From contig OZ241828.1 in NCBI GenBank assembly GCA_965202585.1, forward strand, positions 18,104,001-18,168,000: a DNA stretch of 64,000 nt. Direction: 5' to 3'. The notes beneath the pieces are model-generated. The model made no database searches. It was given only the letters and a program-made list of their open reading frames with translations, and was not told the DNA's origin. Shown here piece by piece: positions 9,275-61,564 of the stretch; the stretch's first letter is position 1, and each line of letters opens with the position of its first letter. The stretch is from Thalia democratica (taxonomy: Eukaryota). Made by a program: the position numbers and the translations under genes.

Positions 9275-9403
9275 CGAAAATGATGCAAAAGATCAATTTC
9301 TCGCTATAAACTTTTTTTCAGTCTCTATGTTAAGTCAAGGTCTATCTGTTTTATTGTAATTATTTTTTTAATTTTCAATTAGTTTCTATTTAAAATCACG
9401 TCA
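9275..9403 (+). promoter_or_regulatory. Palindrome+CRE module (putative regulatory)
   Basis: cgaaaatgatgcaaaagatcaatttctcg (29 bp); tcacgtca with its centre 124 bp from the palindrome start. Strand convention for all modules: + means the palindrome precedes the CRE on the + strand. Confidence 0.6.
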
Positions 9404-12040
9404 TTCAGTGTAAAGTTATACATAAATGTATCGTATTAAAGTATTACATTTTAAACAGCTTTGAAATTTCAATCAGTCGCTAAATTTGAAATCGAAACTA
9501 TGTATAAGAAAAGCTAAGTATAAGTCCATCAAACAAAATAAAAGTTAAACCAAAAACTTTACAAAGATAACTCATATAACTAGTTTTAGTTCAAGAATAA
9601 AAAAATCTTAAAAAGATCTAAAAAAGAAAAGGCTTATCATGAATTATGCTTGAAAACTCAAATAAATTGCGTTCAACATTTGTAGAATAATAAAAAAACA
9701 CAATTAAAGGTAAATATTCTACCTCATTTAGTTTACTTTAGTTGTTTGTATATTTTTAAACCGAAACTCCATGTATTCTGTTTTTAAGTTAACAAATAAC
9801 ATACATATATTTCTTAAATTTAATTTTACTTCAATCAAAAAAACTTTTTGTAAATAAAGTATAATGCAGTTAGAAATTTAATAAGTTTTAAAATTGTAAT
9901 AAAGTTCCTAAAATAACAAAGTACACATTTGTTTTATTAAGGATTCAAGTTTTAAATAAAAGATTAAAAAAGATAAGTATCATATATTATATAGGGATGG
10001 TAAAATTAAAGTAGATTTAATTAAAAAAAAAATCTAAATTCCTAAGTGTTTTTTTAACTACAGCGTTACTTACTTAAAATTTAGTTATGAGTTTTGCTTA
10101 ATCTTCTGAGTAAACACACACCAAAGTACCTATTTTAAATCTAAATAACATAGTATAGTATCAAAATGATTTAAAAAATATAGTGTTAATTTTATTGTAA
10201 TTTTTTTACTGTGACTGTATTAAATGTGTAAACTGAAAGTTTGCAATGAAAACAATAACACTTTTTAAATTTCGTTACAAATAGTTTCTTTACTAGCTTT
10301 GCTTGTTTACTTAATACTTATTATTTAATCTTAAGTTTTTCTTAGTTTTTATAATGTTAGTCGTTAGCTAAAAACAATTTGTAGTTTTTAGTTAAAAATG
10401 TTAAACATTTCTAAAATTGGAGTTTATTGATTTACATAAGTAAAACATATAAAAATAATACCAAAATTAAACTAAAACAATTAACATGTAAAAGTTTACT
10501 GTATAATAAATTTGGGATTTTTAGATTTTTCTATTACGAGTTATTAGTTTTGTTACTAACTGATTAGATAAATTTAAACTGTGAAGTTATAAAACTACCA
10601 CTTATGCAATTATTAAACATAACGTTTTTTAATTAATATAAACAAATATATTTCATATACTATTGTTATTTTATCTTTTGCACCAACAAAATTTTTATAT
10701 TTAGATAGCTAAATGAGATTGATTTTGTACAGCTAAAATAAGAGACAGGTATTTTTAAAACTTCAATTTTTTATTTTTAATTATTATAGTTATACTTGTT
10801 TACTTAATTACTAAATTAATTTAGTAAATACATTTACTCACGCCAATAATTTTTAATTTATTTGTTTATAGTGATTATTAAATAAAACTTTTGAATAAAA
10901 CTATTAGAAATCCGTAACTTATCACAATATAGATGCATAGAATAACTATCAATTACTAAACCTAAATACATGTAACCAATAGGTAAATCTTTTATGGTTA
11001 GTTATTAACAAATTTAACTACAAGAAAAAAGGTCTGTAATACAAAACAAAATAAAAGCTAGGTAGATACTTATACATCTACCCCAGATTTTATCTACAAA
11101 GTAGATAAAACGATACATTTAGTAAGCGATTAAATTTTTTTAAAACAATTTGTAACAATTTAAACACAATTTTCAGATCGTAAATCAACAAAACTGAACT
11201 CAAAAAGATAACCAGTTAAAAATTACGATTAATTTATTTAACTATTGAATAAAAAAGGAAAAACAAAGTATAACTTAAACAAACAAACTGTAAAAAAAAG
11301 TTGGGACTTAATTTTTACATTTCTTCACTCAATTGCTGAATACAAGCACTCTAAAAGTTAATTGCTTTGGCATTTTAATCCTTTTAGATTTTAAAAAGCA
11401 AACTGCACACAATTTATCTATCTACGTTAAAACTTTACTCAATTGGCGGATAAACATCTCTATCATTATTTCGACTTAAAAAAAGTAGAGGGTGCATTAC
11501 CGATTGCAGTAAACAAATATACTGCTACAAACATTTTGTAAATACTCGATACTAACCAACAATTCCACTTTTTGAAAGTAAATTTCTGCGTCCTTATCCA
11601 AGACCACTTAGAACAGACGGCTGTTAGACAAGTCTGCTGCAAAGTCAACTACAAACTTTATGACGTCACCATCGGACAGAAATTTATCAATTGACCACAA
11701 AACATTGTTTTACACGAAGCTTTTGAAAAGCATCATTATGTCTTACACAGTAAAGCTGAAAATAGTTTCTCACTATGATCATTTCAGAATTGATGATTCA
11801 GAAAATCTATGATGACTCACTATTTACAAAAGGATAAATAAATAATTTACTTATACAACTGTTAAACGTAGTTCGATTCAGTGGTCTCTAAATGTATTAA
11901 CAATAAAATTGCTAAACGAAATTATAATAAAATACTATATAACTTAAAATAACAATCAATCGAATTATTAATTTTTTAAAGGCTAAAATACATGAATCAA
12001 TGAAGTGTTCGTTTAAGAAAGAACATGAAGTTGTTTAAAA

Positions 12041-12385
12041 CAGGGGTCAGCAGCTTTTTGTTATTCGCGTTCTCAATTTCTCATAAAATTGATTGCGGGC
12101 CAGAATATTTAGCAAATGTGTTCGAGGGCTATAGATATTAAAAAAGAGTCATATTAATTGCTAAAAAAATACTATTTTCAACCAAATATATAACAAATTA
12201 AGCAGTAAAATAGCACCTTTTAAATTAATTTATAAATTTAAAAGCCTGGTTGTAGGTTTTTATTGTAAAACTTTTAATCTTTTTTTTTTAAGTATGCTTT
12301 TAGCTGAAAAATACCTTGCGGTCAGCAGATTTTGATTTCAAGAAATTTCAAGAAATGCGTTAGGCCTGCACTTCGCCGAACCCTG
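12041..12385. mobile_element. hAT (Charlie-like) MITE, 345 bp; mirrored at 15773-16116
   Basis: TIRs caggggtcagca / cgccgaaccctg; degenerate 8-bp TSD gtttaaaa / gtctaaac; internal gcgggcc motif. Confidence 0.75.
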
Positions 12386-13039
12386 GTCTAAACTAAACTC
12401 ATCAAACAAACTAAAAGCGAACTTATCGTTTGCTTATACAAGATCGAAACCATTAAGAAATTAAATGCAGCAAAAAATCGCTAATAAAACCAAAGGCTAA
12501 CTGCAAAACAGCTAATACTAAAGAAGCTAAGCTTAAGCATAGCTTGAGCTTTGAAATAAAATACGTTTTCTCAAAAAGAGAAAATGTAAGTAGCATTACA
12601 GTAGTTTGATCTTATACCGTGCAATAAATTGTAAATTATAACATATTTAACAAACAATTATAACTACTTTGATAACAAAATCAAAGTTTTTTAAAGTAAA
12701 TTTTTTTTTTTAATTTTGTTGGAACCAATTTTTTAAATTATTTACATTTTATATTTTTTGATGGTACTAAATGTTGTTACTAAAAAAGACTTATTTTCTT
12801 CACTATTTAATACAATTATCTATTAAAAACTTAAATTATTTAAAACTTAGACAATAACTAGTACTTTAGTAATCTAAAGCAACATAAAACAACTAAGTAT
12901 GTTAGTATGTATGCTTTATCGAATAATCGAAACTCAGAGTGCTTTTACCAATTTTTTTTGATATATAGTCTTAGGACTGTAATTAAATATATGTTTTCAA
13001 AAGTAAATTAATAAAAGAGACAGAAAAACGTACTTCTAC

Positions 13040-18062: not shown

Positions 18063-18583
18063 TATAAATTAGCATGATTAAATTAGAAATATTATATTAG
18101 CAACAAACTGGTGTATTCTGAAAAGTTCTTGTTATTCAAATGAAGACAAAAAATTATCTTAACCAGTTTAATTAGTGTAACTCTGTTGAAAAGATTTAAT
18201 TTATTATTTTGATTAATAAGTGTTAGCTTGTTTAAAAGTAATTAAAAACATAATCATAAAAACTAAATAAAATACAGAGTTTGAAACAAAACCATATACT
18301 ACGTGGTGTATTAAATATCTTTTTATGAAAGCTAACATTTTTTCAAATTAGTAATTAAGTAAGGTTGAAAAAATTTATCAAAACAATTAATTTCTTATAA
18401 TTAATTACACTGAATTATCGTTTTATTAAATACAATTTTTTTATTTAAAATTAAATTGAAATAACTAACTACTCAATTTTATAATAAACACTGTATATTA
18501 ATTGATGTATTTTTGTCTTGCTCAGTAATTAGACAAGTTTTTCATCATATCTATAATGGATAAATTTTTTAAATCAAATAATA

Positions 18584-18719
18584 CGAGAACTACATAAAAG
18601 ATCAATTTCTCGTTGCAAATTGCTAACATATAATTCAAGAACAGATTAGCAATTTATGTGTTTGAATTATTTACATATTACACAATGAAGATTGAATTTA
18701 TTGCGTTCAATAGACGTCA
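18584..18719 (+). promoter_or_regulatory. Palindrome+CRE module
   Basis: cgagaactacataaaagatcaatttctcg (29 bp); agacgtcactatgcgctcaa at spacing 131. Confidence 0.7.
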
Positions 18720-19369
18720 CTATGCGCTCAAAATTAATAGATAGATAATAAAAAAATATAAATTTGGAAATAAAATGCTTAAAATAGTTTTGCCCTCTAA
18801 AATATTAATATTTTAAGTTTACAACGCATACTTATGTTAAATCGAAATAAGTATGCTTCACAAAAAAAATATACCACCTCAAAAGATACTTAAATCAAGC
18901 AATAGTACAAAAACGGTATGTCTATAAAGTAAAAAAAACTTTAGGTTGCGTTAGAACTGTAATCAACACAAATGAAGTCTTTTTATAAAGCCTTTAGATT
19001 ATACAAACATTATGCCTTTATCATTTTTGTGCAATTTATTTGATAATCAACGTTTAAAAATGCAAACGTTTTTAATTATATATTAATCAGATATGTTTTG
19101 ATAAAAGCTAACTTATTCTTTTAACTTACTTCACAAAAGCTAATAAATAGTAGTTAAGAAGGATTCAAAATATATCAAATGAAAGTAAGTCGTGTACAAT
19201 AAGTTAACGTTTTTGTTATTATCTACAATTAGTTTTTTCTTTAATTGCATTGAAATTATTAATGCCTAGTTTTTTAATAAATGCAAGATAGGTTTAGTGT
19301 AATGTCTTGGCCTGTTCAAAAATTAAACAATTTTTTTTTCATTCAGATATTGTTTTAGTTAGTCAAATA

Positions 19370-19504
19370 CGAGAATGATAAAAAAGATCGATTTCTCGTT
19401 AAAAATTGCATTCAGATTATTACAACAAAAGTCAACTTTAAAAACTTGGATTATATATATTTCACACGATCAAGCTTGAATTTGTGTGCATTTAAATGAC
19501 GTCA
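19370..19504 (+). promoter_or_regulatory. Palindrome+CRE module (near consensus)
   Basis: cgagaatgataaaaaagatcgatttctcg; gaatttgtgtgcatttaaatgacgtca at spacing 130. Confidence 0.75.
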
Positions 19505-20402
19505 TTGTGCATTTAAAAACAAAAAGGTTTTTTTTTTTATTAAGCTAAAAGGCGAGAAAATAGCTTTGCAATATAAAAATATTCGTATTTTAGTTTACAA
19601 CTGACTACACTCACATTTTTGTTTATTAAATAAAATATACTTAAAATTATTCTTTTAAAAATAACGCTACTTGATTAGAGCAATTGTAAAAAATCGAGAT
19701 ATTCATGACCAAAAGCAAAACTTAATAATGTATCAGAACTTTAAGCAACATGAATGAAATCATTTTTTTAAAGCTCTAAATTCACACTAGCAGCAATTTT
19801 AGATATTTTTGGTGAATTATGTTATATACATTGCTTAACTTACAGATTTACAAAGAATATTAATAATTTGTTCATTTCACTTTTACATTATCTGTAAGTT
19901 TTTTCTATTAAAATGCTTGAACAAATAGTAGAAAAACGTTATTAAAACAAGACAAATTTAATTTCATTTCATTTTTAGCTAAATTATCAATGATTACTGC
20001 TTTTATACTCTTGAAACACTTAAATTACTTATAATTCCGATAAGTTTAGTATTTGCGTGACAATTACATATGTTAAAATACAAAAAAGTCTTTACATCTC
20101 AACCGTAAAAAAAAATTAATTAATCATAAAGTTGAAACAAACAATTTAGAACCAATTTTGAAAATTGTTTGTTTTTTATCAATTAACTACTTTAAGGTTG
20201 TCGCTGCGCGCTTAACTATTGATTTAAATTTTAACTGACAGCAATAGTTTAAAGCGAAAATATTGATTAAAATATTGTTTACTGATAAATTAGCTAAACA
20301 TTAAATAATACTAATATTCTACTATAAAATTTTTTTTTATAATTTCAAAGCTGTGCATTGTTCAAGCTTTCATTTATAAATAAGCTTAACATTATAATTT
20401 AA

Positions 20403-20536
20403 CATGTTATGAATCGTTTTAGCTCGTATAAGTAAACGGTGTTTTTTATCATTTTATTTTTTTAAACACTTTTCTTATCAGACTTTAAAGAATAAAATAA
20501 GTTAGAGCGAGCATATGATTATCTATATCATTATCG
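20403..20536 (-). promoter_or_regulatory. Palindrome module with decayed CRE
   Basis: cgagcatatgattatctatatcattatcg (29 bp, 20508-20536); possible decayed CRE (atgttat) about 130 bp away. Confidence 0.5.
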
Positions 20537-21353
20537 CAAATTTCTAAAACATACCTGAATAACGTTAAAAAAGTTATAGATTAATTAAATATAGATTTTT
20601 TAAAATGTAATGTTTATAGATAGTACTTTGCCGAAATCGGTTCACCATCCACTAAAATTTAAAAAATCTCAAACGTTATGGTGTTCAACTTATGTTTTGT
20701 CATTCCTAGTCAACATTTTTAAAACAAATTAAACTGTTATAAATTTACAATATATAGACTGGATTTAATATTTAAGTTTTGAATTATTTTTGTTTTTTTT
20801 CATCTAGCATATTAATTTACTTTTACTCGAAAATTGTTAAGTTAAACTAGTTTAACAACATAGTTTTTCTGATAAAATTAGCTCAGCTTTTTTTAACTTG
20901 TATGTAATAATATGCACTATATTTCAGCCATTATAACTATAAAACAAAACTTAAACTAAATTTAGTTTTGTTATTTTGCTGATAAAACAAACTATTACTG
21001 TAACTCATTTTGAAAAAGAAATGATTGGTATGAACTTTCATTTATAGCAAAGAAAACAAAAACTAGTCATATCATGTTTGTTTATTGAAGAAAATTTTTG
21101 TATACCATTATTTTAACTGTAAAAGTTATAAACAAAATCTCCTTTTCTTTTAATTTAAAAAATTATTATCTGGTCAATTTTACATTTTCGGGAGGAAATA
21201 ATAATTACTAAAACTTTAACTCTTACTTAAATTTAAAACTTTTTTGCACTAATGATAGAATAAAATTAAATATTATATATTGTACAAAACCAATATGCAT
21301 TTTTTAATTTAATCAATTTTTAAATTTAAAAAAATTGGCTGTTTTTAATCTTA

Positions 21354-21470
21354 AATACCTACAAACTTAGGATTTATAAAAATGTATAAAACAATTGTGT
21401 ATTAGGATACAATTGTCTTAGTAAAAAGCTGTGGTTTCTAGCAAGAAATTGATCTTTCATATCAATCTTG
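21354..21470 (-). promoter_or_regulatory. Palindrome module with CpG-decayed arms
   Basis: caagaaattgatctttcatatcaatcttg (29 bp, 21442-21470); aaatacctacaaac resembles the reverse TTTGTGTG block; CRE lost. Confidence 0.55.
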
Positions 21471-23683
21471 CAAAGTATAATGCATTAGAAACAATAGAAA
21501 AAGTTTAGCTTAGTTAATGTTTTAGCACCTTGTAGTAATGACAAAAAATTAAAAGTATATAACTTTCTTTGAAAACTAAGACAATATAAACAGTTTTAAA
21601 GTGATACTTATGTCAATTTTAATTTGTTAAAGGAATACAATTATTAGTATTAATAATAACTATTTTTTCAGAATAACCTTGTGGATAAATTTATAATAGA
21701 TTTAGTAGACTATAAAATGTGTTAATATTTCATACAAAATTTTCTTTAATAAACTAAAAATAACTATTTAGTTCGTTTGTTCGATAGAAAAATTTCAAAA
21801 ATATTAAAAAATTTATGTTTTAAAAAATTGAATTTAAATATTTGTAGTTAGTCTAAAATCAAACACATACTTGATTACAACTTTATAATTTTAATTTCGT
21901 GTAACTGTCGTGCTGTTAAAACTTTTTGGTATTAATTTGATCGAGTTGTTTATCTAATTTTACCTAATGTAATTCCATTATATACATATATATTTGTTTT
22001 ATTAGATTATATAAAAAACGATAAATTAAACGACCGTTTCGTATTTGAGATGTATAACTTCATATGATCATCAGTCAGCTATAATTTATTTAGAATGTTA
22101 AACAGAAATTCACAATTTGAAAATTTTAATTTTTTTTGACTTAGAAATAATGAAGTTTATTGTAAAGTAATTTGAATTGGAAAAAACACGCTGATCTTGA
22201 TAGTTTAAGAACTTATAAATTTTGAAAAATTTAAAAAGAGTGTTTTAGATAAATGTTTTAAAGTGTATTAGAAAAATATTTAAAACTTTAGACTTTTGCT
22301 TTTTGAGACCCTGTTTAATTAGTTATTAATACTTTTTGGTCGATTGACAACTTTTTTTAAACAATTAGTACAACTAAAACACAAAAACTAGCTAAACTAA
22401 CAAAAGTAACGATTTACGCTTAGTTTAATATTTCGTTTGAAATTAACTTGCTATCATTTAATAAGTAGCAAAATAGTTGTTAACTTTTTTCACAAAACTT
22501 AGAAGTTTCTGTCATGTTAAATATTTTTATTTTTGTTAGTTTTTTTCTTTCGGCACACTAAGGAATTGTAAATACTCTAAACCTACTTAAAAAAAATTAC
22601 CTAAATTAAAAGATATAATATATATCGCTAGATGATATTGTTCGACACACACACGTATTAATAAATTTTAGATCTAAATTTAAAAAATCAGCCTACATGT
22701 AGAACAAATGATGAGTAAAATGTTCTTTTGAAGCAAAAAAAAAAGGTGTATATTAATTAAAGATAGCTTTAAAATAGTTTTTAACTGAAGTTTTATAAAA
22801 AAATTATCTTCGATAGGTCTTATTTTACTTTGTATCACTTTTCCATAAATTTTATATCATATTTTTTTTTATTATAAATCTAGTTTCACTTATAACGATA
22901 AATTGTAAATCAGAACTCAAAAATATTTTTTTTCTGTAATATTTAAGTAAACGTTTTAGGAATATTATAATTTTAGAAATTTTTGTTTAAACATTTTGAC
23001 TATAATAAATATATCGAGTTTATTAAATGCGTTTATTGTAAAGACAACATATAAAAAACAGATTTTTTAACAACATCATAAGTTTTGTTTAATTGAAAAT
23101 GTTTTAAATTTTAATTTTTTTAAGAATAGTAGAATTCAAAATATAAAGTATACAATAAAGTAACCTGTAAAACATTTAGCATTTAATTTGTAATGAAAAC
23201 ACTAATTCAGACATAAATTATGTTTATATTTTTACCGTTTAAAGTATAAAATACTTTAACTTACGTATTTAAGCAATTAAACGGTATTTTAGTATTTATT
23301 TTAAGCTTTAATTGTTCTACTTTATTATTTTACTTAATAAAAATTTAAGTACCCTCATATAATTTTTTAAGCTAAAATAGTCTTACTAAATTTTAAATTC
23401 ATAAAATCCGAAATAATTTTTAATAACTGTAGCGTACCATTACTGATTAATAAAACCAAAGTTTAACAACTACATTGACTAAAATTAACTATACTTTGCC
23501 ATTATGTTGTTACTACTGTTGTATTTCTTTATAAGATAAAACTTGATCATTTAATATAAAAAATGTGTTGCGCAACTACAAAATAATAAAAAGTTTTATT
23601 TTATTATTACGTTTTATTATTACTATAAAATTTTCGTTAATTAAACGAGGCAGTATTATCTTATACTCAAAAAAAAAATACTA

Positions 23684-23817
23684 CGAGAATGATATAAAAG
23701 ACCAATTTCTCGTTATAAATTTGTTTAAAAATGGTGTAAGTATTTACTTTTTATTGCTTCTGATTATTTATAAATAAAGTAATGCAGATTAATTTTGTGT
23801 GTAACAAAATGACGTCA
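23684..23817 (+). promoter_or_regulatory. Palindrome+CRE module (near consensus)
   Basis: cgagaatgatataaaagaccaatttctcg; ttttgtgtgtaacaaaatgacgtca at spacing 129. Confidence 0.75.
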
Positions 23818-24278
23818 AAGAGTGCTTAAAAATATTTAATGCGATAAAAATATTTATGTCAAAGGTTACTAGAATGGTGATCATTTTCTTGTTCTAACTA
23901 CTAAAAGGTGTAAGACAGAGTTAAATAATAGTAGTACTAAAAAAAGTTGTTATTTGAATAAAATAATGAAGATTTTTACAATTAAATTTACGTAATTTCT
24001 ATATAAATAACGTTAGTGGAAACTTAAAACGAGTATTGTAATGTGATAAAAAAAATCAAAAATCATTGCTAAATCAATCTTATCGCGCTTAATATATTTT
24101 TGTAAGAAACAGTGTCGTTAAAAATGTCGATGAAAAAATTGTTTAATGCGATAAAAATTTGTAAATCAAATTAACCTTATTGTGCTAAATTTTTTTTTTG
24201 TAAGAAATAGTGCTGCATCATAAAAATCTATAAACTTCTTAAGTTCTTTCACTCAAGTTATTGTTATACCAGGATGTT

Positions 24279-25542: not shown

Positions 25543-25571
25543 CAAAATTAATAATAAAGATCAAATTCTTG
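25543..25571 (+). promoter_or_regulatory. Palindrome core only; a Penelope-like remnant lies where the CRE would be
   Basis: caaaattaataataaagatcaaattcttg followed by ctataaact (consensus YTAHAAAYT). Confidence 0.45.
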
Positions 25572-25589
25572 CTATAAACTGCATTTTTC

Positions 25590-45150: not shown

Positions 45151-45283
45151 TGACGTCACTTAAGTTTTACACAAACAAAAAGTTAGAACATAAATGTATA
45201 AATTTTTCATCTATGATCAAAATTTTAGCTTTGTTTGTCAGCAGTTATTATTAGCAAGAAATTAATCGCAAATATTATTCTTG
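45151..45283 (-). promoter_or_regulatory. Palindrome+CRE module
   Basis: tgacgtca...tacacaaac; caagaaattaatcgcaaatattattcttg (29 bp); spacing 128. Confidence 0.65.
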
Positions 45284-45636
45284 CAATACTACAAATTTTA
45301 GATATATTACTAAAACCTTAAATTCATAAATGTTTTCTTTATTATTTTTAGTTTTTATTTTGTATAACTTAAAAAGCAACATTAATATACAAATTAATAT
45401 TTTGCGTTTAAAATCGACTGTATACTATGTAATACAGGTTACTTAAATTTGTAGCAACAAATACTTTTTTGATTTATTTCTGAAACTATATATTAATTTA
45501 AGATTTTTATTTTACATATAATTGTAAAATTTTTGATATTAATTAGAGTATGATTTATTTATTATCTTATTAAAAAGAAAAAAAAATATTTGAAAAAAAT
45601 TATATATATTTAATATAAAGGTTTATTTCAAGATGT

Positions 45637-46660: not shown

Positions 46661-47330
46661 AGAAGCTAAATGAGTGTATTTTTGCAGGTAAATTTAATGC
46701 AGTTGCAAAACGTTTCCATTGAGATTTAGTCATAATATAGCAGTTTGCTATAAACTATTCGGATCAAATTATCGTACTAATAAGTTTAATAAACCTCTTT
46801 ATCTTGAAGTCTTAAAAAGTTTCGAAAACTGATAATAGTAAAAAAATCGTGTCAATATTATTTACAATACACAGTGCAAAGAAATTTTATAAATTTAAAT
46901 ATAAAACTTCAATAGATGCTCAATAAATAAATAAAAAATTTTACCAATGCTTAATTGCACATTGACGTCACACAAATGCACACAAGTTCAAAATACAATG
47001 AATAAAAATAAATCTATGATAATATATAAACTAGTCTCTCCACTGTTAAACTGTATTTTTAACAAGAAATTGATCTTTTATATCATTCTTGTACAATAAT
47101 CAAAAAGTTATAAAGTAAATGTATTTTCTTGATTTTTTTTTCAGTTAAAGTTCTTAGATATAATTCCTAAGTTCTAAACTAGCAAACTTTTTTAGCACAG
47201 CTTATTTAGAAAAACTGTTAAAAAAAAAACAATTATGACTAAAACTAAATTATTTTCTAATATATTTTTATCTATTTACTCAATAATTTTTGAAATATTT
47301 TTACCAAAATTTTTCTTAAAACATTTTATT
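46661..47330 (+). repeat. Local duplication (paralogue at about 49213-49870) containing one module each
   Basis: Shared agaagctaaatg, gcagttgcaaaacgtttcc, tatttacaatacacagt, tacaataatcaaaa, ataattcctaagttctaa, tatgactaaaactaaa. Confidence 0.9.
46963..47091 (-). promoter_or_regulatory. Palindrome+CRE module
   Basis: tgacgtcacacaaatgcacacaagttc; caagaaattgatcttttatatcattcttg (29 bp); spacing 124. Confidence 0.75.
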
Positions 47331-47351
47331 CTTAAAGTTTATTAAAATATG

Positions 47352-47490: not shown

Positions 47491-49500
47491 AAACAAAGCT
47501 TAAATTTTCGAAATATAATATATTAAAGCAATATTTAATAAGTTTGTCTTTAGTTTTTAATTATTATCATCCTAAAATTAAAAAACATTATATATTAACT
47601 TGGTAGAAAAGAACAAACATTTAATAAAAAGAACTATATACTTGTTTATTTTTATTTTATGAATCATAAGCTTAACGTTAAAGAAAATATTTTTCATTAA
47701 TAGACTATAGTTTTTGAATCGATAATAAAGCTACAAATAAAGAAAAATATTTTATTATAACTAAGCTAAATTTACACGAGTAATAAAAGTATATACTTGA
47801 TTTCATTTTATTCTTTTTGGTCAAAAACTAATCTGTATTTAAAGATTTTATTTTTAAAAATATTTTAATATTAGTTTTATTATTTAATCAGATAAAAGTG
47901 TTTATATTTTAATACAAGGTAGCAAAGCATATAGTTTTTATATAGCTTATAGTTTATAAAACAAACAATTTTTTTTTCGTTTAACGTCAACTAGTATTAT
48001 GTATATTTGAAAAAAAAGTTAATTCTGGTATAAGAGGTTTTAATTTATATAAATTTTAGTTTAAAAGTTTTTTCTTCTAGCTAAAAGAAGCTAACTGAAT
48101 TAAATAGTAAAAACTGTGTAGTATTAACCATTAATTAACGAAATATACGCAAAGATATTTGATAACTTTTTTAACTAAGAAACGTATATATGGTGTAAAA
48201 CTCAATAACCGAAAGGTCTTTTTGTTAACAAGTTGCTATTTACGACAAAAACTTAAATTGTAATTTTAGTAATTACTCTTTATTCTTTTCATCAAAATTT
48301 TGTTTTGTAATATAGTTCTTATTAGCTCTTATCTCGAAATAGATTTCAGGTATTGATAATATAGTTTAAGATTAATAAAGGTTTGTTGTATTTTAACTAG
48401 ATAGACAAAAAAATAATTGACATCTCTTATAAATGTATTTTTAAGTAAATATCAAAATATCGGAACTTTACTTTATGATATATAAAATATAAAACTAAGA
48501 ATTTTATCAGCAGTAAAAAATAAGTAAGTGTTAAAATTTTTAAAAAAGAAAATTAAGTTTTACAAACTTTCAACTAAATTAATTTTATGAAAGTTTTATC
48601 AAACAACTTTTTTGTCTAAACAATATAAAAAATTGAACTTAAAAAAAAAGTTCTATAGTTCAAGTAGTTTAATTGATATGTGACAACTTTTATCTTCTAA
48701 TTCTATTGTACTTAAAAGTGTTATTGTTTACTTTTAATATAAATTTACTAGCATTATTTAACTAAAGTTTTGTCTTTCTTGAACTTTGTAATATTGATGG
48801 TGTCTCAAGAACATAAATTATTGATAATTTAACTCGAAATAAAAAGTTTTATAAAAGGGAAATTTTAATTAAATAACTTATTTATTTTATACCACGTGCT
48901 TTTAAATAGTGTTTTCTCCATAATAGTCGGTAAAACTTTCTATTTTATAAGTATTACGTTTCAGATTTAAACAAAGGAATTATAAATAGATAAGACTTTA
49001 GTCGTTTTTTTTAAAACTTTATCTCTTTTTATTATAAAAAATGTGTTGCTTTAAACATAATCAAGTGAAATTAAATTTTAAAGATAATAAGCTGATAATT
49101 TAATTTACAATTTTTTGAAGCTAAAAGAAGTTGGTTATTTAGGAGGTGATTAAATTTTTTTACATAAAATAAGCTGCAGTTTTTTACACAAGTAAGTTTC
49201 AATTTATCTAAAAGAAGCTAAATGCAGTTGCAAAAACGTTTCCTTTGAGTTTCAGTTCTAGCAATGATAACATATTAAAAAGAAATTTTGCAATGTTTTT
49301 TTTAGTTTAACTTATCTATCTAATAAATTTATAAAGTTTTATTTTTTTAAGTCTAACAAATTTTCGAAAAAAAGTTTAAAAAAAAATAAAAAAGAGTATA
49401 AATATCAATGTTATTTACAATACACAGTTCAAAGCAATTTTTAAAATTTAAATAAATGCTTAGTAAAACATTTTTTTTCTACTAATATTTAAGCGCACAG

Positions 49501-49632
49501 TGACGTCAAACAAATGCACACAAATTCATATTTTATCGCAATGCATATAATAAAAGCCACACTAATATGTTACGTGCGTATCACAAGCCATCTATATTTT
49601 TAACGAGAATTAGATCTTTTTTATCATTCTCG
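49501..49632 (-). promoter_or_regulatory. Palindrome+CRE module (near consensus)
   Basis: ttaagcgcacagtgacgtcaaacaaatgcacacaaattc; cgagaattagatcttttttatcattctcg (29 bp); spacing 127. Confidence 0.75.
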
Positions 49633-51104
49633 TACAATAATCAAAACATTATAAAGTAAATATATTTACTTGAACTCTTTTTCTTTAGATAAAGTTATCA
49701 AACATAATTCCTAAGTTCTAACTTAGCAAACTATTTTAGCCAAGCTTACTAAGAAAAACAGTTATATAATGAAACAACTATGACTAAAACTAAAGTATTC
49801 TGTAACATATGTTTATCTTTTTACTCAGTTATTTTTGATACAATTCTAATAATTTTTTTCTTAAAGCACAAAGTTCATAAAATATGGCTGGCAAACAATT
49901 ATTAATTGTCGTTATGAATAAAACTCTATATTAACATAATTATAGATTTGTATTTGTCAAAAGATTTAATACAAATGCTTAAGTTTTTAAAGAATTTATT
50001 TGAGTACTAAAAATTTAATAACCTAATCTTTGCTTTCTTGCTACACATGAGACTTATATTTCTAAAATATTTATTTAATATATACTCATCGTTTTTAGAC
50101 TAAACTTTAAATGTTTTATATATTATAATTTCTTTTCATTTTTATAAGCCCTTGTTGTTAGTTAAACCAAAATAAATATATTAGCCAAACCATTCTCATA
50201 TTGACATAGTTTACTTTTAACAAACAATATGTAGCCTTTCTTTTTCAATAATAGTCAAATATTTTACTTTTCAAACAAATATTTTAAACATATTATTTTC
50301 AATATAAAAATGTAATCGATATATTTGCAAAACTAACAAAAATTATATTTATAGTCGGTTGTTACTAGAAAAGTTTGACATGATATATATTTTTACTTAA
50401 TAAGCATAAAAATTTCACTGATTAATCTAAGATATGTCTGAAACTAAACTAATCTTATTGATAGAGACTAAAACTCCAAAAACTGACTTTTTTAGGTCGT
50501 TGATTTTGACTTAGGTACTTTAAATTTATATTGATAACACTAATGTACTAAAATTCGTTTTCTACTTTGTTTTTCTCCGGTCCTATTTTACTGAGAGTAA
50601 TATAATAAATCAACTGTCGCTACAAAAAGATAGTTATAAAGTAAATATACACTAAGATTGAAAAAAATGCACGGCCCGCGAATGTTTGAAAATATAAAAT
50701 AATCCAACCGTAGAACTATTTTGATTCTAACTAGTAGCGTGTAGCCAAAATGATAAGTTTTACTTATGTTTGGAATGAAGTTAAGATATATTTATATAAA
50801 ATGAATTGAAAACTTCTGTTTTTCTAAGTGATGTTATCTTGTATCTAAGATAACATAGAAATAACAAAAATAAAAAGTTTATTTAATTAAGCAAATATTA
50901 GTTTTACACTAATTTTTGTTTGTTAATGTTAGTTAAAATTTGAAGCTCAATTTTTTTTAAGATAAGCATTAGATGTTTAAAATTCAAATTTAACAAAATC
51001 GAATTGTTTATTGAACTGAAAAAACGAATTCTTAAAAGGTTTGTCCAAAAACCTAGTACATGATTTTTCTCTTTATTTTCCAAGTCATAAACCAGAAGGA
51101 ATGA

Positions 51105-53161: not shown

Positions 53162-54293
53162 CTACATTTTTTTAACGAAGCACACAATTATTTACTTGCC
53201 GTATTTGCTAAATACTTTTATGAATTTTCTTGACCAAAAGTATCATATTTGTCGAAAAAAATATGTTTTATCAATATAAGGATATTTATTAGTCATTATA
53301 GTGAACTTATACATTAATAAACAATCTATGTACTTCTGTCTGTACTATGTTAACTATCTTTTTTTTTTTTTTTTAAAAAAAGTAGCTCCTTTTTCATTAG
53401 TTTTTTTAATTTTTTCAAAGATAATCTGTCTCAACATTGTTTAATGCTTAAAACATGCTAGTTAAGTTACCAATTTATTTTTATCAGGTTTATATTAGTT
53501 GTATAACATTATGAAAGATCATACTATTAGTGATAAGCTGCACTTGTATAACTAAATATTATTGTTGTTTTGGTCACCTTTACAAAAATGATTAATTGCT
53601 TTTAATAAGTTAATATGTTTCCTTAACTGACACTTTTGAACTGGTAAAAAATTTACGGAGATGTTTATTTATACTTAATTTCAATGTTTGATACTGTACA
53701 AATAAAAACCAATATTTAATTAATGCTCATTGTTTCATGTTAATAATGATCACAAGAAAAAAAAACTGTGTTTGTTTTTATGACATATTATTACGATTAA
53801 GTAATGATTTAATTTATATAGTTTAAACATACTATAAATCTTTCAATAAACAAAAAAAAAGGTTTTTAGGGCGATACATATCTTTATTAACCGCCATTGT
53901 ATAATCCTAAAATAGTTATTTTATATCAAACGTAATATATAATTGTTGTACCACTCAGAGTTAAGTTATAGTTTTAAATTGAGCAAGTTTTACTTACTAG
54001 TTTAGTTAGATAGTTTAGTTCTAACTTTAACTTAGTTATCACTTTCAATAAAATTTGTTCGCCAGTTTTCGCCAGTTTATTAGCGTTAGCAAATACTCTA
54101 ATCATTTAAAAATTAAAAAATATACTTGCATGATATTACTACTTCTAGGAATTATAAAACTTTAAAATTATTTTGCTTTTAACAAATTTGTTTGTACTAC
54201 AAAACATTATGATATTTTAGATAGAATTGTAAATCTAAATAAATTCGCTGGTTCCAAGCAACGATAATTTTTTGTTATGTCTAAAACATTAAG

Positions 54294-54432
54294 TGACGTC
54301 AATTTAGAGACTCGCAAATAATTAATTCAATGAAATTTATATATAAAATCAAGTTTAACGATTATTATTTAACTTTAGTAGTTTTGGATAAAGAATTTTG
54401 TAGCGAGAAATAGATCTCCTTTATCGTTCTCG
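54294..54432 (-). promoter_or_regulatory. Palindrome+CRE module
   Basis: tgacgtca...ctcgcaaat; cgagaaatagatctcctttatcgttctcg (29 bp); spacing 134. Confidence 0.75.
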
Positions 54433-55518
54433 CAAAACATAGCATTTAAGTTGAAAAACAGCTAATTTTTTGAAAATAATTAATATAATAACGAATTTTT
54501 GTTTTAGCAATTTTTTCATATTATAAATATGAAACATTTTACAAAAAATCACAAACTATAAAATTAATGTATAATAAAATATTATGTTTATGCTTAGTAA
54601 TCTTTTTAAAAATACTTGCAAAGATATTGTTTGTTAGATTATAATCCCGTAACGTATTAAAAAAATGAACTGGATGTTTTGGAAAACATAATGGCAACCT
54701 TAAAAAAAAATTATTTTGTTTATCATAATTAACGATAACCTTTGCTTTAAAATTCAATGTATAGTTAAAATAAAACATGTTTAAGGTTTAATCTATGGTT
54801 TTTGTTATCCACGAAAAATAGTTTACATTAATAAAACTGTGCTTTAACATTTTGTTATGTAGTTTTCGTGTCTTAATAAATTACGTTTTCGAAATTTCAC
54901 AACAGATAGTTTAAGTTGTGAGTAGCTTTTTCTTCTAAAATAAGAAGTCATACTTCATTATAGTTTATGTTTTTTTAGTTTGTCTATTTTAATGTTATTG
55001 AGCATTTTTAGTTATGCATTTTATAAAATGTTTTTGCATAAAACAAAATACTAAGTTTAATTTCTTTAGAATAAAAGTTGTCAAATTGTATTTTTGATAA
55101 TGTTTTGCTATTGTTTACTCTACTAAAAATTTTGTTGTTTGTTTGTTTAAACAATTGTTTCATGATTTTTTTTTCACTTTTAATATTAACTTATGGAAAT
55201 TTCTTTTTTTAAAAAAAAAAGCATTCTTTCCTATTTGGTAGGTTCCTATTTTCATTTTAAGTTTTCTAGTTTTTACCGATAGGTCCACAATTTGACAAAA
55301 GCTAAAAATCAAAGTGATAACATTTTAATTTAAAACGTAGTTTTTTTTAGCTTTGTAAATCAATAAAAATTTAGCATAATAACGTTAATGATGCTTTTTT
55401 TTATCAAGTTAGTTAAAATAAATACATTAAAGATTTTTTTACGATAAAATTAACTAATCAATTTTAGTTGACGGATCTCAATAGTTATACGTTTAATAGT
55501 AATAGTATTAAACTTTTG

Positions 55519-57710: not shown

Positions 57711-59873
57711 TATTTAACTAAAACTACTATATATCTAAACTACTTACTAAAACAACTTACTGAAACTGAAACTACAACAAGTTTATGTGTTTATTTGTCA
57801 GCTCACTAAATCCTGCAACTTTTTTAAAATACTCCTGCGCACAATTGTAATTTTTTTGACTATTTATATTTTTTAATAGGTTATCATTTAATTATAAATT
57901 AAATAAACGATAACTTTTGATAAAGACAAACTTATCCAACATTAAAGTGCAGTATCTAAAGATCTTTATTTGGTCAATATTTAGATTTATCTTTTCATAT
58001 TCCTAAATTTAGCAAGTTAAGACCAGACTTGGTCGAACTTCGAACTTTTTTTCAGTAAAACATTATAAAAAAGTTATTAAAATAAGTACATAATGTTTTT
58101 AAATTACACAAAAAAAGGCTACTAAATAATTTATTACTCTACAAACCTAGTAAAGATTAGCTAATCTAAAAAAGTTGAAAAAAAATTGTAAAATTAGTTT
58201 TAAATATTTACTAAAACTATAATTTGTTCTAAAATTAATAAAAAAGTTTGGATTATTTTGCAATTTATAGTTATTAATCTCTGTAAAACTTGGCGCTGAG
58301 TAACTAGTTATTCATTTACTTTTTATTACTTTGGAAAAGTAAAACGTTTTTGTTTTTTTTTTTCGTTTAAAGCTATTTACGTTTATCAAACATGCATTTA
58401 AAATTTTGAGAACGTTGCGGTAGTAATTTTTTTTCAAGTTGTTATAAAATTAAATGAAAGTCGGTTGGCATTTTTCAACAAAACATTTGTCTAGTTAACA
58501 AAACACCTTTAAGTATTTCGAACGTTTTCAAACTATTAATGGTTGTAAATTTCTTTAAAAATTTAAATAACTTGTTTAGTTTGTTTAATCTCACATTATT
58601 TGTTTATTTTTTGCTTTAAATGATACATAATAATACTACAATCGGTACAAAAGTTATTCTTATTATTTACTTATAAACTTTTAAGTGAAAAGAATTAATA
58701 ATTTAAGCAGTAGTTTTTTAAACCCTCTCTTTATTTAGAGCTGAAAAAGTTTGGCAATACTGTTTTTTTAACAAAAGTAATTTCATTAGAAGCAAATCTA
58801 TTTATAAATTTATGTTGATCTGTAACAAAAACGTAGTTCTTAGTTATAGACTTTTAAGCGCTTAGAGATGTCACAGATTAAAATTTTGTTGTTTGACTTA
58901 ATATCCCTAAGTACTTTAAATAATATATAAATTCTAGTTCCTCATAACTGGCAAAGTTTAAAATCCTTACAGTCAATATCCCTAAATATTTAAAAATAAT
59001 ATTTTAAAACTAGCCTACGTTAAAATGCTTGCAGCTTTGCAACGAGTAATTGTAATCATGTAAAATAATTGGTATTTACTTCAAATTTTATGCTACTTGT
59101 CTTAGTGTATTATAAAACATTCAGACAATTACAACAACTAATAACGTATACTTCTTACAAAAAAGCGTAAATGCATTAAACAAGAATTATGAAAACAAAT
59201 TTCTCTAAAGTTAGTACTTTTGAACATTTATAGTTTAAATTGAATCGATAAATTGTCCTTTTTTATTTTTCATATATAATTATAAAAAGTTAAATTAACT
59301 ACAGCAACTTAAAACTTATTTTTTGCTTTATTTATTCTATACAATATTGAGTTCTAAAGTACAAAAATTTTGAAACGTTATGAATCAAGTATAGGTAAGC
59401 TAATCAAGTTATAAGGTTCTAAGTTATAAGTTTTCAAACAATACACACATAAATTTCAAATCAATTAGAACTTAAACTAAACAGTTCCTTACGGAATATA
59501 AACAAACTCAAAGGCGGTAATTTCCTGTAATTTGTATATTTTAAACTGAATTTTAGTAAATTTAACTTTTAGTTATGTACCATACAGTCTTTTAGGCTAT
59601 GTACTTAAAAATGTTGAAATAACGACTTGCATTTTTTACCGAAACGCTTAAGTTAGGTGGTAAAGTTGTATATGTAATTTAATGGTTAGGGATAAAATAG
59701 CGTTGCGGTAACAATTAAACTTAACTATTATACTTTTTTTAATCAGGAACCATCGTTTTTACTTAAATTTCAGCGTTAAAAGTTTTTTCGTTTAAATATT
59801 ACATTAAGTGTTTAAAAAATTTATTAAGTTCAGCATAAAATATTAACATTGTGTTATAAATATTTTATTCATG

Positions 59874-60002
59874 CACGAATGATATAAAAAAGTTATTTTT
59901 CTTTTAAAATTTGTTTCCAACCTGCTAATGTTGTTTAAAAACAAAAATTTTATAAAAAAAATTTTACAGAGTTTTGATTTTTGTGAGTTTTAAGTGGTGT
60001 CA
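59874..60002 (+). promoter_or_regulatory. Decayed palindrome+CRE module
   Basis: gcacgaatgatataaaaaagttattttt; tttgtgag and aagtggtgtcatt at spacing 124. Confidence 0.45.
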
Positions 60003-60125
60003 TTTAATTTCAAGTCATAGCAAAATAAATAGTTATATAGTTTATAGTTTTTTATTACTCTCGAAATTCACTATCACGGAACACCAATAATTTCCTAAAC
60101 CTTAATAAATTGAAGATTAATATTT

Positions 60126-60154: not shown

Positions 60155-60367
60155 TACCACTTTAAAATTAAAAAAAAAATTAAGTTTCAATTATTAACAT
60201 ACTTCAAAAACTTAAGATATAATATATAACTTTAAAATTTTAATTAGAACATTACATTAACATGTGTATATAAGTTTAATAAGAAGCTATTATATATATT
60301 AAATTGATTTATTTTTAATTTTACGAGTATATGTGTTGATGATAAAAAAAAAGTGTTTTACTTTATG

Positions 60368-60496
60368 CGAGAATGATAAAAAAGATCGATTTCTCGTTAA
60401 AAATTCGATGATAAATATATTACGGATTGTAAAAATTAAAGCCATTTTCTATTTTAAATGTTCAAGTTTGAATTTGTGGTGCTTTAAGTGACGTCA
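60368..60496 (+). promoter_or_regulatory. Palindrome+CRE module (near consensus)
   Basis: cgagaatgataaaaaagatcgatttctcg (core identical to 19370); gaatttgtggtgctttaagtgacgtca at spacing 124. Confidence 0.75.
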
Positions 60497-61434
60497 TAGC
60501 TGTAAAAATATAATTATTACTTAGTAATTTATATTGAGGTGTAACATCTTTTTTATTTTCTACTTCTCATATGTTCATTCTGTTATCTTAGTTTAATCTA
60601 ATTAGTTTTTTTAACTATATGCATGTTGTTTAATTATTTTTTATATAATGTAAATAATTTGTTTTGATATTTGTCAACGCGACAAAAACATAAAGTTAGA
60701 TAAGCTGCTTAAATCTATAATTGTGTTCAACACTTAGTTCTTAATATCAAACTTAATTTGAGTTTAATTTTTAGCACAATCTTTAATGTTTTAAAGAAAT
60801 TTGTTTTTAATCTTAGTTTCCTTTTAAAAGACTTACTTATGGAATAAACTATTAAAAAGTTCATAATCATGTTTATAAAAATAGAATCTAATATAATACT
60901 TGATCTTTTTTTATCAATTATAAAAATTATCTTAAGTGTATCTGAAAATTAAAAATTTAAATTTTTAAATCTACAATATATATAACGATAAGTAATTTAT
61001 TATAACAAAAATTTTTTTTTTAATATCTTTACAAAAAAAAAAACGACAATAAATTATTTATCTCCACTTAATACTTTAAACTAAATATATTTTAATTTAA
61101 TATAACTTATATTTAATATAACGTACGTTTAAATATTGATTAAGTTTTCTATTTATATTGAAAAGCTCTTACGAGTAAAATGTGATGTTACAATTTTTGT
61201 GAAATAAAAAATATAACAAGAATTTTGAATACCATTACGGTTTTACCGTAAAAAAATGTTTTTTATATAAAGTAAATGAGATAAATTTAAAAACAAGCTA
61301 ACAATTTTTTTTTATTAGTTAATTATTTTTGCAGAATGTGAATTAAAATTAATAGTAGTTTAATTTTAATACGTTTAACTTTAATAACAAAATACGTTTT
61401 TATCCAAAATTAAAATGGGAATAATGTGTTTTTG

Positions 61435-61564
61435 CGAGAATGATATAAATGATCAATTCCTCGATAAAAATATATTTATAATGAATAACAGATAAGACAA
61501 AAACTTACTGTAATATATATACATAATTAAAGCTATAATTTGTATATTATTTCAAGTAACATCA
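61435..61564 (+). promoter_or_regulatory. Palindrome module with decayed CRE
   Basis: cgagaatgatataaatgatcaattcctcg (29 bp); tttgtata and aagtaacatca at spacing 125. Confidence 0.65.

What the first reader, a model, noticed from the sequence alone, without database searches (positions are those of the whole stretch)
9275..61564. About 25 dispersed copies of a fixed-geometry module: 29-bp interrupted palindrome + non-conserved spacer + TTTGTGTG/TGACGTCA block; candidate array of small-RNA promoters or protein-binding sites
SEEN: RCGAGAA-N17-TTCTCGY (inner consensus TGATAWAAAAGATCDAT) recurs about 25 times in both orientations, clustered in 18-33 kb and 43-62 kb. The core is exactly 29 bp in about 19 copies, even though it spans an A-run in indel-prone DNA. 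In most copies a CRE octamer or a decayed version sits 123-135 bp from the outer edge of the palindrome, preceded by TTTGTGTG. Eight of the nine perfect TGACGTCA sites I found belong to these modules; at about 23-25% GC (by-eye estimate) well under one is expected by chance. The roughly 70-bp spacers do not align between copies, and similarity stops within about 5 bp beyond the CGAGAA end. KNOWN: TGACGTCA is the CREB/ATF site. snRNA-type promoters pair a distal enhancer with a fixed-length proximal element. C. elegans 21U-RNA (piRNA) loci are clusters of individually transcribed units, each with a conserved upstream motif followed by unrelated sequence. INFERENCE: conserved motifs and spacing with free spacer sequence imply selection on protein binding. 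The best hypothesis is a cluster of motif-driven units (CRE enhancer then palindromic proximal element) that each transcribe a different short RNA just beyond the palindrome. Alternatives are recombination or chromatin-anchor sites, or an ancient non-autonomous rolling-circle element with a terminal hairpin. I do not recognise this motif from any described system.
Basis: partly seen in the sequence, partly recalled or inferred. Interest (0 to 1): 0.82.

Follow-up and report, generated by a model that had tools for sequence, protein, structure and literature searches.

The report
Clustered mini-genes for hairpin-tailed small RNAs
This AT-rich animal genome (probably a tunicate) holds hundreds of ~150-base modules that look like tiny stand-alone genes, each apparently encoding a short RNA with a fast-evolving unique head and a shared hairpin tail, but no RNA data were available to confirm this.

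Summary
The window holds 18 modules (13 well kept, 5 decayed). The 29-bp palindrome occurs about 470 times in the 802-Mb genome. Nearly all copies lie in two Mb-scale clusters on one chromosome. Sister families with a different hairpin loop form clusters on other chromosomes.

Only two blocks are conserved: the hairpin block and the TTTGTGTG-N8-TGACGTCA block. The spacer and flanks have diverged to random, yet spacer length is held. The palindrome shows compensatory changes, so it acts as a base-paired hairpin. A TATA-like box sits about 60 nt from it on the CRE side.

In paralog groups with alignable flanks, the ~20 nt next to the hairpin diverge faster than the flanks and are GC-enriched. 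That boundary coincides with the start site predicted from the TATA box.

Best reading (about 0.4): each module is an autonomous mini-gene read from CRE to hairpin. It would give a ~60-nt RNA: unique head, AAUUUnUAR, 3' hairpin. A plain transposon is unlikely.

No RNA data could be obtained. The scan found the same system twice before on other DNA of this genome (s1-287052, s1-301093).

The parts
9273..9417 (+). Module 1. The strand given is the one that reads hairpin to CRE; the predicted RNA is on the opposite strand. This holds for all modules below.
   Evidence: Palindrome 9275-9303 (arms 11/12). CRE-like TCACGTCA at 9396-9403..
18582..18733 (+). Module 2
   Evidence: Palindrome 18584-18612 (arms 12/12). 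AGACGTCA at 18712-18719..
19368..19518 (+). Module 3, an intact reference copy. Hairpin 19370-19398; TTAAAAAT (AUUUUUAA on the RNA strand) 19399-19406; unique head about 19407-19430; TATATATA 19453-19460; TTTGTGTG 19481-19488; CRE 19497-19504.
   Evidence: Sequence read..
20373..20538 (-). Module 4, decayed
   Evidence: Palindrome 20508-20536 (arms 10/12). CRE 5/8..
21342..21472 (-). Module 5, with a CAAGAT...TTCTTG stem variant and a lost CRE
   Evidence: Palindrome 21442-21470..
23682..23831 (+). Module 6, intact
   Evidence: Palindrome 23684-23712. TGACGTCA at 23810-23817..
25541..25700 (+). Module 7, decayed (hairpin block only)
   Evidence: Palindrome 25543-25571 (arms 8/12)..
26421..26585 (+). 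Module 8
   Evidence: Palindrome 26423-26451 (arms 12/12). TGACGTTA at 26564-26571, distance 141..
29351..29497 (+). Module 9, with a decayed loop
   Evidence: Palindrome 29353-29381 (arms 11/12). TGACATCA at 29476-29483..
32361..32508 (+). Module 10
   Evidence: Palindrome 32363-32391. TGACGTCA at 32487-32494..
43116..43263 (-). Module 11
   Evidence: Palindrome 43233-43261 (TGAGAA...TTCTCG). TGGCGTCA at 43130-43137. Its spacer matches only five paralogous modules of the same cluster..
45137..45285 (-). Module 12, with compensated stem variants (CAAGAA/TTCTTG and TAAT/ATTA)
   Evidence: Palindrome 45255-45283. TGACGTCA at 45151-45158..
46949..47093 (-). Module 13, with the compensated stem variant CAAGAA/TTCTTG
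   Evidence: Palindrome 47063-47091. TGACGTCA at 46963-46970..
49487..49634 (-). Module 14, intact
   Evidence: Palindrome 49604-49632. TGACGTCA at 49501-49508. Its head has no other genomic match at 3 or fewer mismatches except its own duplicate..
54280..54434 (-). Module 15
   Evidence: Palindrome 54404-54432. TGACGTCA at 54294-54301..
59872..60016 (+). Module 16, decayed
   Evidence: Palindrome 59874-59902 (arms 8/12). TGGTGTCA at 59995-60002..
60366..60510 (+). Module 17, intact
   Evidence: Palindrome 60368-60396. TGACGTCA at 60489-60496. Identical to a paralog about 1.76 Mb away in the same cluster (held as L005)..
61433..61578 (+). Module 18, probably a dead copy
   Evidence: Palindrome 61435-61463 with a broken stem pair (TTCCTCG). 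TAACATCA at 61557-61564..

Best explanation
Each module is a self-contained mini-gene for a short non-coding RNA, read from the CRE block toward the palindrome.

On that strand the order is:
1. TGACGTCA (a bZIP/CREB-type site) at about -75.
2. N8-CACACAAA and CTTCAT elements at about -60 to -40.
3. A TATA-like box at about -30.
4. The start site, about 28 nt before the hairpin.
5. A unique, fast-diverging, GC-richer head of about 15-20 nt.
6. A single-stranded AAUUUnUAR, resembling an Sm/Lsm site.
7. A 3'-terminal bulged hairpin: 7 + 4 base pairs with loop CUUUUAU.
8. The RNA end, 2-6 nt after the hairpin.

The product would be about 60 nt. The shared tail would bind a common protein, and the head would act as a guide by base pairing.

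Shown:
- the conservation pattern;
- base-pair covariation in the palindrome;
- the placement of the TATA-like box;
- the compositional shift and hypervariability of the head;
- the clustering and the existence of multiple families.

Inferred: that the modules are transcribed, the direction of transcription, the RNA ends, the polymerase, the binding protein and the guide function.
For: Distribution
- The palindrome has 469 hits at 3 or fewer mismatches, against 0 for the control. Almost all lie at 15.1-18.9 Mb and 87.7-93.8 Mb of the window's chromosome (contig C4).
- The block TTGTGKG-N8-TGACGTCA has 284 exact hits, against 1 for the control. These form clusters on at least four large contigs (C1, C2, C4, C6).
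- Strictly defined complete modules number 192, against 1 for the control.
- A second family has the same layout with an 8-nt hairpin loop.

Selection on the blocks
- Pairwise identity is 0.82 in the hairpin block and 0.64 in the CRE block.
- It is 0.57 in the spacer and 0.59-0.60 in the flanks, equal to shuffled sequence.
- Spacer length is 58-74 nt in 40 of 45 copies.

Hairpin
- 92.8% of cells are paired.
- There are 17 double-change cells, against 6.1 +/- 1.9 in shuffles (0 of 500 reach it).
- Four pairs are compensated.
- Genome-wide, TGAGAA...TTCTCA and CAAGAA...TTCTTG doubles far exceed the number expected if the two sides changed independently (hand count).

Start-site prediction
- A TATA-like element is about 6-fold enriched 31-50 nt from the CRE. 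That is about 60 nt from the hairpin.

The head is special
- The 19 nt next to AUUUnUAR have 28.6% GC. The rest of the spacer has 21.8% and the flanks 22.2% (p = 6e-5).
- In paralog groups with alignable flanks, this segment is the least conserved or close to it: 0.45 against flanks of about 0.6-0.8, and 0.40 against 0.8-0.9. In the youngest group, 0.85 and 0.78 in the two adjacent 20-nt bins against 0.93-0.97.
- In family 2 the cassette is 0.59 identical against 0.74 for the flank, and lower in 137 of 153 pairs.
- Three boundaries coincide at about +56 to +60 from the palindrome start: the TATA-predicted start, the GC shift and the edge of hypervariability.

Folding
- The hairpin forms with probability above 0.5 in 37 of 50 copies, and the head stays mostly unpaired.
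Against: - No transcript evidence. No RNA run was found, and the single read-laying run was lost to a filter.
- No Rfam family matches, even at E up to 10.
- The strand is not proven. G-U wobble counts are balanced (15 vs 18), and the TATA polarity is not significant.
- AAUUUnUAR lacks the G of canonical Sm sites.
- The genome's U1 genes and spliced-leader copies show no TGACGTCA at the corresponding distance, and U1 shows no CACAA there. The U6 searches were also empty, but the U6 anchor was unverified.
- The one head tested has no near-complementary site elsewhere, so no target is known.
- The covariation counts are inflated by shared ancestry among copies.
- Other notes of this scan say TGACGTCA is also strongly enriched in this genome's exons. 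If so, it may not be a simple CREB site here.
Confidence: 0.4

Rival explanations
1. Opposite reading direction. The hairpin and the adjacent YTAnAAAT act as an upstream element plus TATA box, as in a type-3 / snRNA-style promoter. The RNA starts in the spacer and runs through the TTTGTGTG-TGACGTCA block.
For: - YTAnAAAT scores better as a TATA box in this direction (39 vs 11 copies).
- In family 2 a conserved T7-9 run lies about 35 nt after the CRE, like a Pol III terminator.
- The CRE block is conserved for about 35 nt, which could be the body of an RNA.
Against: - The hairpin would then lie outside the RNA, yet it shows compensatory changes.
- The central base of YTAnAAAT varies freely among T, C, A and G, which is poor for TBP.
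- There is no T-run enrichment after the CRE in family 1.
- The hypervariable, GC-rich segment would fall between the TATA box and the start site, where nothing explains it.
- U1 genes show no CTCG element at that distance.
Confidence: 0.12
2. The CRE is a distal enhancer, the palindrome is a proximal promoter element bound by a dimeric protein, and a different short RNA starts just beyond the palindrome.
For: The fixed spacing of two conserved blocks resembles distal/proximal element promoters. Similarity stops right after the palindrome.
Against: - Compensated double changes are not expected for a homodimer site.
- There is no GC shift, conserved base or hypervariable segment beyond the palindrome.
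- The TATA-like element is about 90 nt from that putative start.
Confidence: 0.07
3. Untranscribed DNA elements. The modules would be paired protein-binding sites at fixed spacing, serving as chromatin anchors, insulators, replication origins or recombination sites. The palindrome would extrude as a cruciform or be bound symmetrically.
For: - Conserved blocks with constrained spacing and free sequence between them.
- Mb-scale, gene-poor clusters.
- Pairing covariation is also compatible with a DNA hairpin.
Against: This does not explain faster-than-flank divergence and GC enrichment in just the ~20 nt beside the hairpin. It also does not explain the TATA-like box at promoter distance.
Confidence: 0.15
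4. An old, non-autonomous mobile element (Helitron-like with a terminal hairpin, or a MITE/SINE). Its ends would survive by chance or by gene conversion, with no host function.
For: - Non-autonomous rolling-circle elements share only their termini and carry a 3' hairpin.
- Copies occur in both orientations.
- Subfamilies exist.
Against: - About 470 copies are confined to about 1% of the genome.
- No target-site duplications (5.36 vs 5.17 for the control).
- No terminal inverted repeats.
- Only 2-6 nt follow the hairpin, rather than about 10 nt plus CTRR.
- Flanks and interior are saturated while the blocks keep 82% identity, which requires selection.
- Duplicates arise by segmental duplication that carries the flanks along.
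Confidence: 0.08

Closest known systems
Caenorhabditis elegans type-I piRNA (21U-RNA) loci with the Ruby motif
   Same: Hundreds to thousands of autonomous mini-units, each with a conserved upstream motif followed by unrelated sequence. They are packed into two Mb-scale clusters on one chromosome, on both strands (PMC3597512; bioRxiv 10.1101/281360).
   Different: - The motif is unrelated (TGACGTCA / CACACAA / TATA rather than CTGTTTCA).
- Density is far lower, about 1 per 8-17 kb.
- The predicted product is about 60 nt with a conserved AAUUUnUAR-hairpin tail, not a bare 21-mer.
- No 5'-U signal was seen.
- The host is probably a chordate (tunicate), going by other notes of this scan.
U7 snRNA and other Sm-class guide RNAs (spliced-leader RNA, nematode SmY, herpesvirus HSURs)
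   Same: The predicted layout matches: a single-stranded 5' guide of about 15-20 nt, then a U-rich AAUUUnUAR site, then a 3'-terminal hairpin, about 60 nt in total, made from its own compact promoter.
   Different: - There are hundreds of different heads instead of one.
- The Sm-like site lacks the canonical G.
- No Rfam U7 match.
- The promoter blocks were not found upstream of this genome's U1 genes or spliced-leader copies; the U6 searches used an unverified anchor.
- No 3' box is evident.
Non-autonomous Helitron / Helentron elements
   Same: Conserved termini with a heterogeneous interior, and a short hairpin near one end.
   Different: No 5'-TC or CTRR-3' ends, no A/T insertion signature, no dispersal, and only 2-6 nt after the hairpin. 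Conservation is non-uniform in a way that requires selection.
CRISPR repeat-spacer arrays (by analogy only)
   Same: A conserved hairpin-forming unit sits next to a hypervariable segment of fixed length.
   Different: The host is a eukaryote. Units are separated by kilobases, and each has its own promoter-like block. Heads are inherited and diverge in paralogs rather than being acquired. The one head tested has no source or target match in the genome.

Membership tests
Nematode-type piRNA mini-gene clusters | Many autonomous units in Mb-scale clusters on one chromosome | tested here: met
   469 palindromes, nearly all at 15.1-18.9 and 87.7-93.8 Mb of contig C4.
Nematode-type piRNA mini-gene clusters | Ruby motif (CTGTTTCA core) about 40 nt upstream of a 21-nt RNA that starts with U | tested here: not met
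   The conserved blocks are different sequences. No conserved T or any other base appears in the unique segment.
Nematode-type piRNA mini-gene clusters | Short capped precursors; mature RNAs bound by PIWI | not testable with these tools
   No RNA runs were found for this organism.
U7 / Sm-class snRNA | Matches the Rfam covariance model | tested here: not met
   No hit at gathering score or at E up to 10 in the window, and none at gathering score in 245 kb of cluster DNA.
U7 / Sm-class snRNA | Sm site RAUUUKUGR between a single-stranded 5' part and a 3' hairpin | tested here: inconclusive
   AAUUUnUAR is conserved directly 5' of the hairpin on the CRE-to-hairpin strand. It has A where canonical sites have G.
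U7 / Sm-class snRNA | Same promoter type as the genome's own snRNA genes | tested here: not met
   No TGACGTCA, CACAA or CTCG was found at module-like distances upstream of U1 starts, and no TGACGTCA upstream of the spliced leader. The U6 searches were also empty, but the U6 anchor was not verified. Only exact patterns were tried.
Helitron-like non-autonomous element | 5'-TC ... hairpin - about 10 nt - CTRR-3', inserted between A and T, dispersed through the genome | tested here: not met
   Conservation ends 2-6 nt after the hairpin. Copies are confined to clusters.
MITE / DNA transposon | Terminal inverted repeats and target-site duplications | tested here: not met
   The two ends are unrelated. 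The longest word shared by left and right flanks averages 5.36, against 5.17 for the control.
CREB/ATF-driven promoter | Full palindromic CRE TGACGTCA within about 100 bp of a TATA box | tested here: met
   27 of 50 copies carry a perfect CRE. A TATA-like element lies 31-50 nt away. Binding and activity were not testable.

The most novel reading that the evidence does not exclude
A chordate lineage has evolved a large, multi-family set of autonomous guide-RNA mini-genes, from several hundred to over a thousand. Each would make a ~60-nt RNA with a common protein-binding AAUUUnUAR-hairpin tail and a 15-20-nt head under diversifying selection. This would be a programmable RNA-guided system unlike piRNAs, snoRNAs or U7, and undescribed in animals.
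Probability: 0.25. Interest if true: 0.9.

Novelty: new variant of a known kind. Interest (0 to 1): 0.74.

Why it matters
If these modules are transcribed as predicted, a chordate lineage independently evolved clustered, autonomous small-RNA mini-genes. Until now that gene organisation was known essentially from nematode piRNAs. The product design would also be different: a unique head joined to a shared hairpin tail.

The heads diverge faster than neighbouring non-coding DNA. That points to selection for new specificities, as expected for guides in defence or gene regulation.

The prediction is sharp and cheap to test: the strand, a 5' end about 28 nt before the hairpin, a 3' end just after it, and a length of about 60 nt. 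One small-RNA library from this species would settle it.

Tried and rejected
RNA evidence
- Two run searches found only DNA-like runs.

More genomic copies
- I therefore could not inspect the promoters of this genome's snRNA genes or the other clusters.

Strand inference
- G-U wobble counts are balanced.
- A hand count on the genome-wide lists favoured the CRE-to-hairpin strand 14:4, but those copies are not independent.
- TATA polarity is not significant.

Pol III terminator
- No T-run enrichment after either end in family 1.

Ideas rejected on inspection of the sequences
- Box C/D or kink-turn reading of AUGAUA in the loop: there is no box D or GA partner.
- RSS-like heptamer CACTGTG after the CRE: present only in a subfamily, with no consistent nonamer spacing.
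- Splice donor GTGAGT after the CRE: the GT is not conserved.
- Spliced-leader RNA gene: the head is not conserved, and the real leader has no such promoter.

Other negative results
- Coding potential: no ORFs in the modules or in the family-2 unit.
- Target search: one spacer matches only five paralogous modules, and one head has no other site at 3 or fewer mismatches.
- Other species: two metagenome scans found nothing.
- Literature: four searches found no description of this motif or system.

Full report
**What is there**

The window is G000:C4:18104001-18168000 of an 802-Mb assembly with about 23% GC. CGAGAA-N17-TTCTCG with at most one mismatch occurs 11 times, against 0.01 expected. TGACGTCA occurs 9 times, against 0.15 expected.

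An iterated profile search finds 15 full modules. A hairpin-block profile adds decayed copies. I tabulated 18 modules. All have a 29-nt core. Eight of the nine perfect TGACGTCA sites sit 121-131 nt from a palindrome start.

Read from hairpin to CRE, the module is: T-R-CGAGAA-TGATAWAAAAGATCNAT-TTCTCG-YTAnAAAT, then about 70 nt of unconserved sequence, then a.TTTGTGTG-N8-TGACGTCA-nTGnGnGCTtAa. The window contains no tRNA, no Rfam family even at E up to 10, and only one clear protein gene.

**Genome-wide picture**

The palindrome has 469 hits at 3 or fewer mismatches and 0 for the reversed control. Nearly all lie at 15.1-18.9 Mb and 87.7-93.8 Mb of contig C4. A few lie on C6, C10 and small contigs.

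The block TTGTGKG-N8-TGACGTCA has 284 exact hits against 1 for the control. These fall in clusters on C1, C2, C4 and C6.

In the clusters on C1, C2 and at 9.5 Mb of C4 the partner is a different hairpin: AACGAG-CACAYCGT-CTCGTT, followed by the same ATAAAT. The window's family is therefore one of several with a common layout. A strict pattern for complete modules gives 192 hits against 1.

**Not a plain repeat**

Outside recent segmental duplicates, copies share only the ~150-bp module. Flanks do not align.

Pairwise identity by region:

| Region | Identity | Shuffled |
|---|---|---|
| Hairpin block | 0.82 | 0.56 |
| CRE block | 0.64 | 0.55 |
| Spacer | 0.57 | 0.56 |
| Flanks | 0.59-0.60 | 0.59 |

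Spacer length stays at 58-74 nt in 40 of 45 copies. There is no target-site duplication signal and there are no terminal inverted repeats. Duplication happens by copying whole segments together with their flanks. The family-2 unit has no ORFs. A neutral transposon relic does not fit. Selection on two blocks and on their spacing does fit.

**The palindrome is a hairpin**

I used an alignment of 44 distinct copies. The proposed structure has a 7-bp outer stem, a 2-nt bulge, a 4-bp inner stem and a 7-nt loop.
- 92.8% of cells are paired.
- There are 17 double-change cells, against 6.1 +/- 1.9 in shuffles (0 of 500).
- Slid controls give 28-55% paired.

Four pairs show compensated types: A-U/G-C at the outermost pair, G-C/A-U at the third, and both inner pairs. 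In the genome-wide lists, TGAGAA...TTCTCA and CAAGAA...TTCTTG doubles each occur about a dozen times. Independence would predict about two of each (my hand count).

Copies are related, so these numbers overstate the number of independent events. Even so, a homodimer site would not favour matched double changes.

**Direction and ends**

A TATA-like element is enriched about six-fold 31-50 nt from the CRE on the hairpin side. That is about 60 nt from the hairpin. Read from CRE to hairpin, the order is: CRE, N8-CACACAAA, CTTCAT, TATA, about 50 nt, AUUUnUAR, hairpin. A start site 30 nt after the TATA box leaves about 20 nt of unique RNA before AAUUUnUAR.

Two independent signals mark the same boundary.
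- **Composition.** The 19 nt next to AUUUnUAR have 28.6% GC. The rest of the spacer has 21.8% and the flanks 22.2% (p = 6e-5).
- **Hypervariability.** In three paralog groups of this family whose flanks still align, the 20 nt at +40 to +59 from the palindrome start are the least conserved stretch or close to it. Identity is 0.45 where flanks are about 0.6-0.8, and 0.40 where flanks are 0.8-0.9. In the youngest group it is 0.85 there and 0.78 in the next bin, where flanks are 0.93-0.97. In family 2 the corresponding cassette is 0.59 identical against 0.74 for the flank, and lower in 137 of 153 pairs.

Faster-than-flank divergence of exactly this segment argues that it matters and is being diversified. 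It also argues against it being a mere TATA-to-start gap.

The hairpin folds with probability above 0.5 in 37 of 50 copies, and the head stays mostly unpaired.

**What remains open**

I could not obtain RNA evidence. The strand is inferred from layout, not proven. Wobble pairs are balanced and TATA polarity is not significant.

An earlier agent (s1-301093) reported that similar units share the promoter type of this genome's U1/U6 genes. My exact-pattern tests do not bear that out. No U1 start and no spliced leader has TGACGTCA at the module distance, and no U1 start has CACAA or CTCG there. The U6 searches were also empty. I could not read those promoters, and the U6 anchor itself was unverified.

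One spacer matches only five paralogous modules. One head has no other site at 3 or fewer mismatches. No target is known.

Other notes of this scan report that TGACGTCA is also highly enriched in this genome's exons. I did not test that. If true, the octamer may have a role here beyond a classical CRE.

**Comparison with known systems**

The closest parallels are:
- Nematode 21U-RNA loci, for the clustered autonomous mini-units (PMC3597512; 10.1101/281360).
- U7-type Sm-class RNAs, for the layout of guide, U-rich site and 3' hairpin.

The modules fail the defining tests of both. They also fail those of Helitrons and MITEs (see the membership table). Four literature searches found no description of this system.

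**Verdict**

This is a real, strongly non-random, selected multi-family system. It most likely consists of small-RNA mini-genes with diversifying heads and a common hairpin tail. I put about 0.4 on the specific model and about 0.5-0.6 on 'small-RNA genes' in some orientation. The same system was noted before by this scan on other DNA of this genome (s1-287052, s1-301093).

Noticed in passing
window 11804-16353: A large inverted repeat. Arms 11804-13926 and 14232-16353 are 98-99% complementary around a 305-nt centre. The region is GC-richer (about 31%) and holds mirrored short ORFs; to my eye one resembles a retrotransposon integrase tail (no domain search succeeded).
   Followed up: partly
window 34840-36210 (-): A single long ORF encodes a BACK + Kelch-repeat protein (Pfam Kelch_1 2.8e-27, BACK 1.2e-23). 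It is the only clear protein gene in the window. The minus-strand modules at 43-54 kb read hairpin-to-CRE toward it, and the plus-strand modules at 9-32 kb read toward it from the other side.
   Followed up: partly
window 11661-11668: The one TGACGTCA outside a module lies just outside the inverted repeat. Other notes of this scan claim a strong enrichment of this octamer in exons of this genome.
   Followed up: no
window about 43000-64000 vs G000:C4:16.387-16.405 Mb (L005): A recent segmental duplication about 1.76 Mb away, 98.4% identical over 8.2 kb where held. It carries modules 11, 14, 15, 17 and 18 as paralogs. L004/L008 (99.6%) and L006/L009 (about 95%) are similar pairs.
   Followed up: partly
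G000 genome-wide; L040-L047: The Ciona-type spliced leader ATTCTATTTGAATAAG followed by GT occurs 358 times. The eight loci examined (L040-L047) look like retro-copied trans-spliced mRNAs (leader, then 5' UTR, then ATG) rather than leader-RNA genes. A 15,085-bp-period array lies on contig C26.
   Followed up: partly
G000: C4 47.27 and 49.69 Mb, C6 55.9-61.1 Mb, C8 48.74 Mb and others: 42 full-length U1 snRNA genes (116-132 bits) lie in small local groups. None is in the module clusters.
   Followed up: no
window 51106-51410 (-): A short tandem, low-complexity repeat gives leucine/phenylalanine-rich pseudo-ORFs.
   Followed up: no
L021-L039 (family 2), about 35-40 nt after TTATAAAT: A semi-conserved motif (C/T)ATGACAAY recurs inside otherwise variable cassettes of family 2. 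Its meaning is unknown.
   Followed up: no
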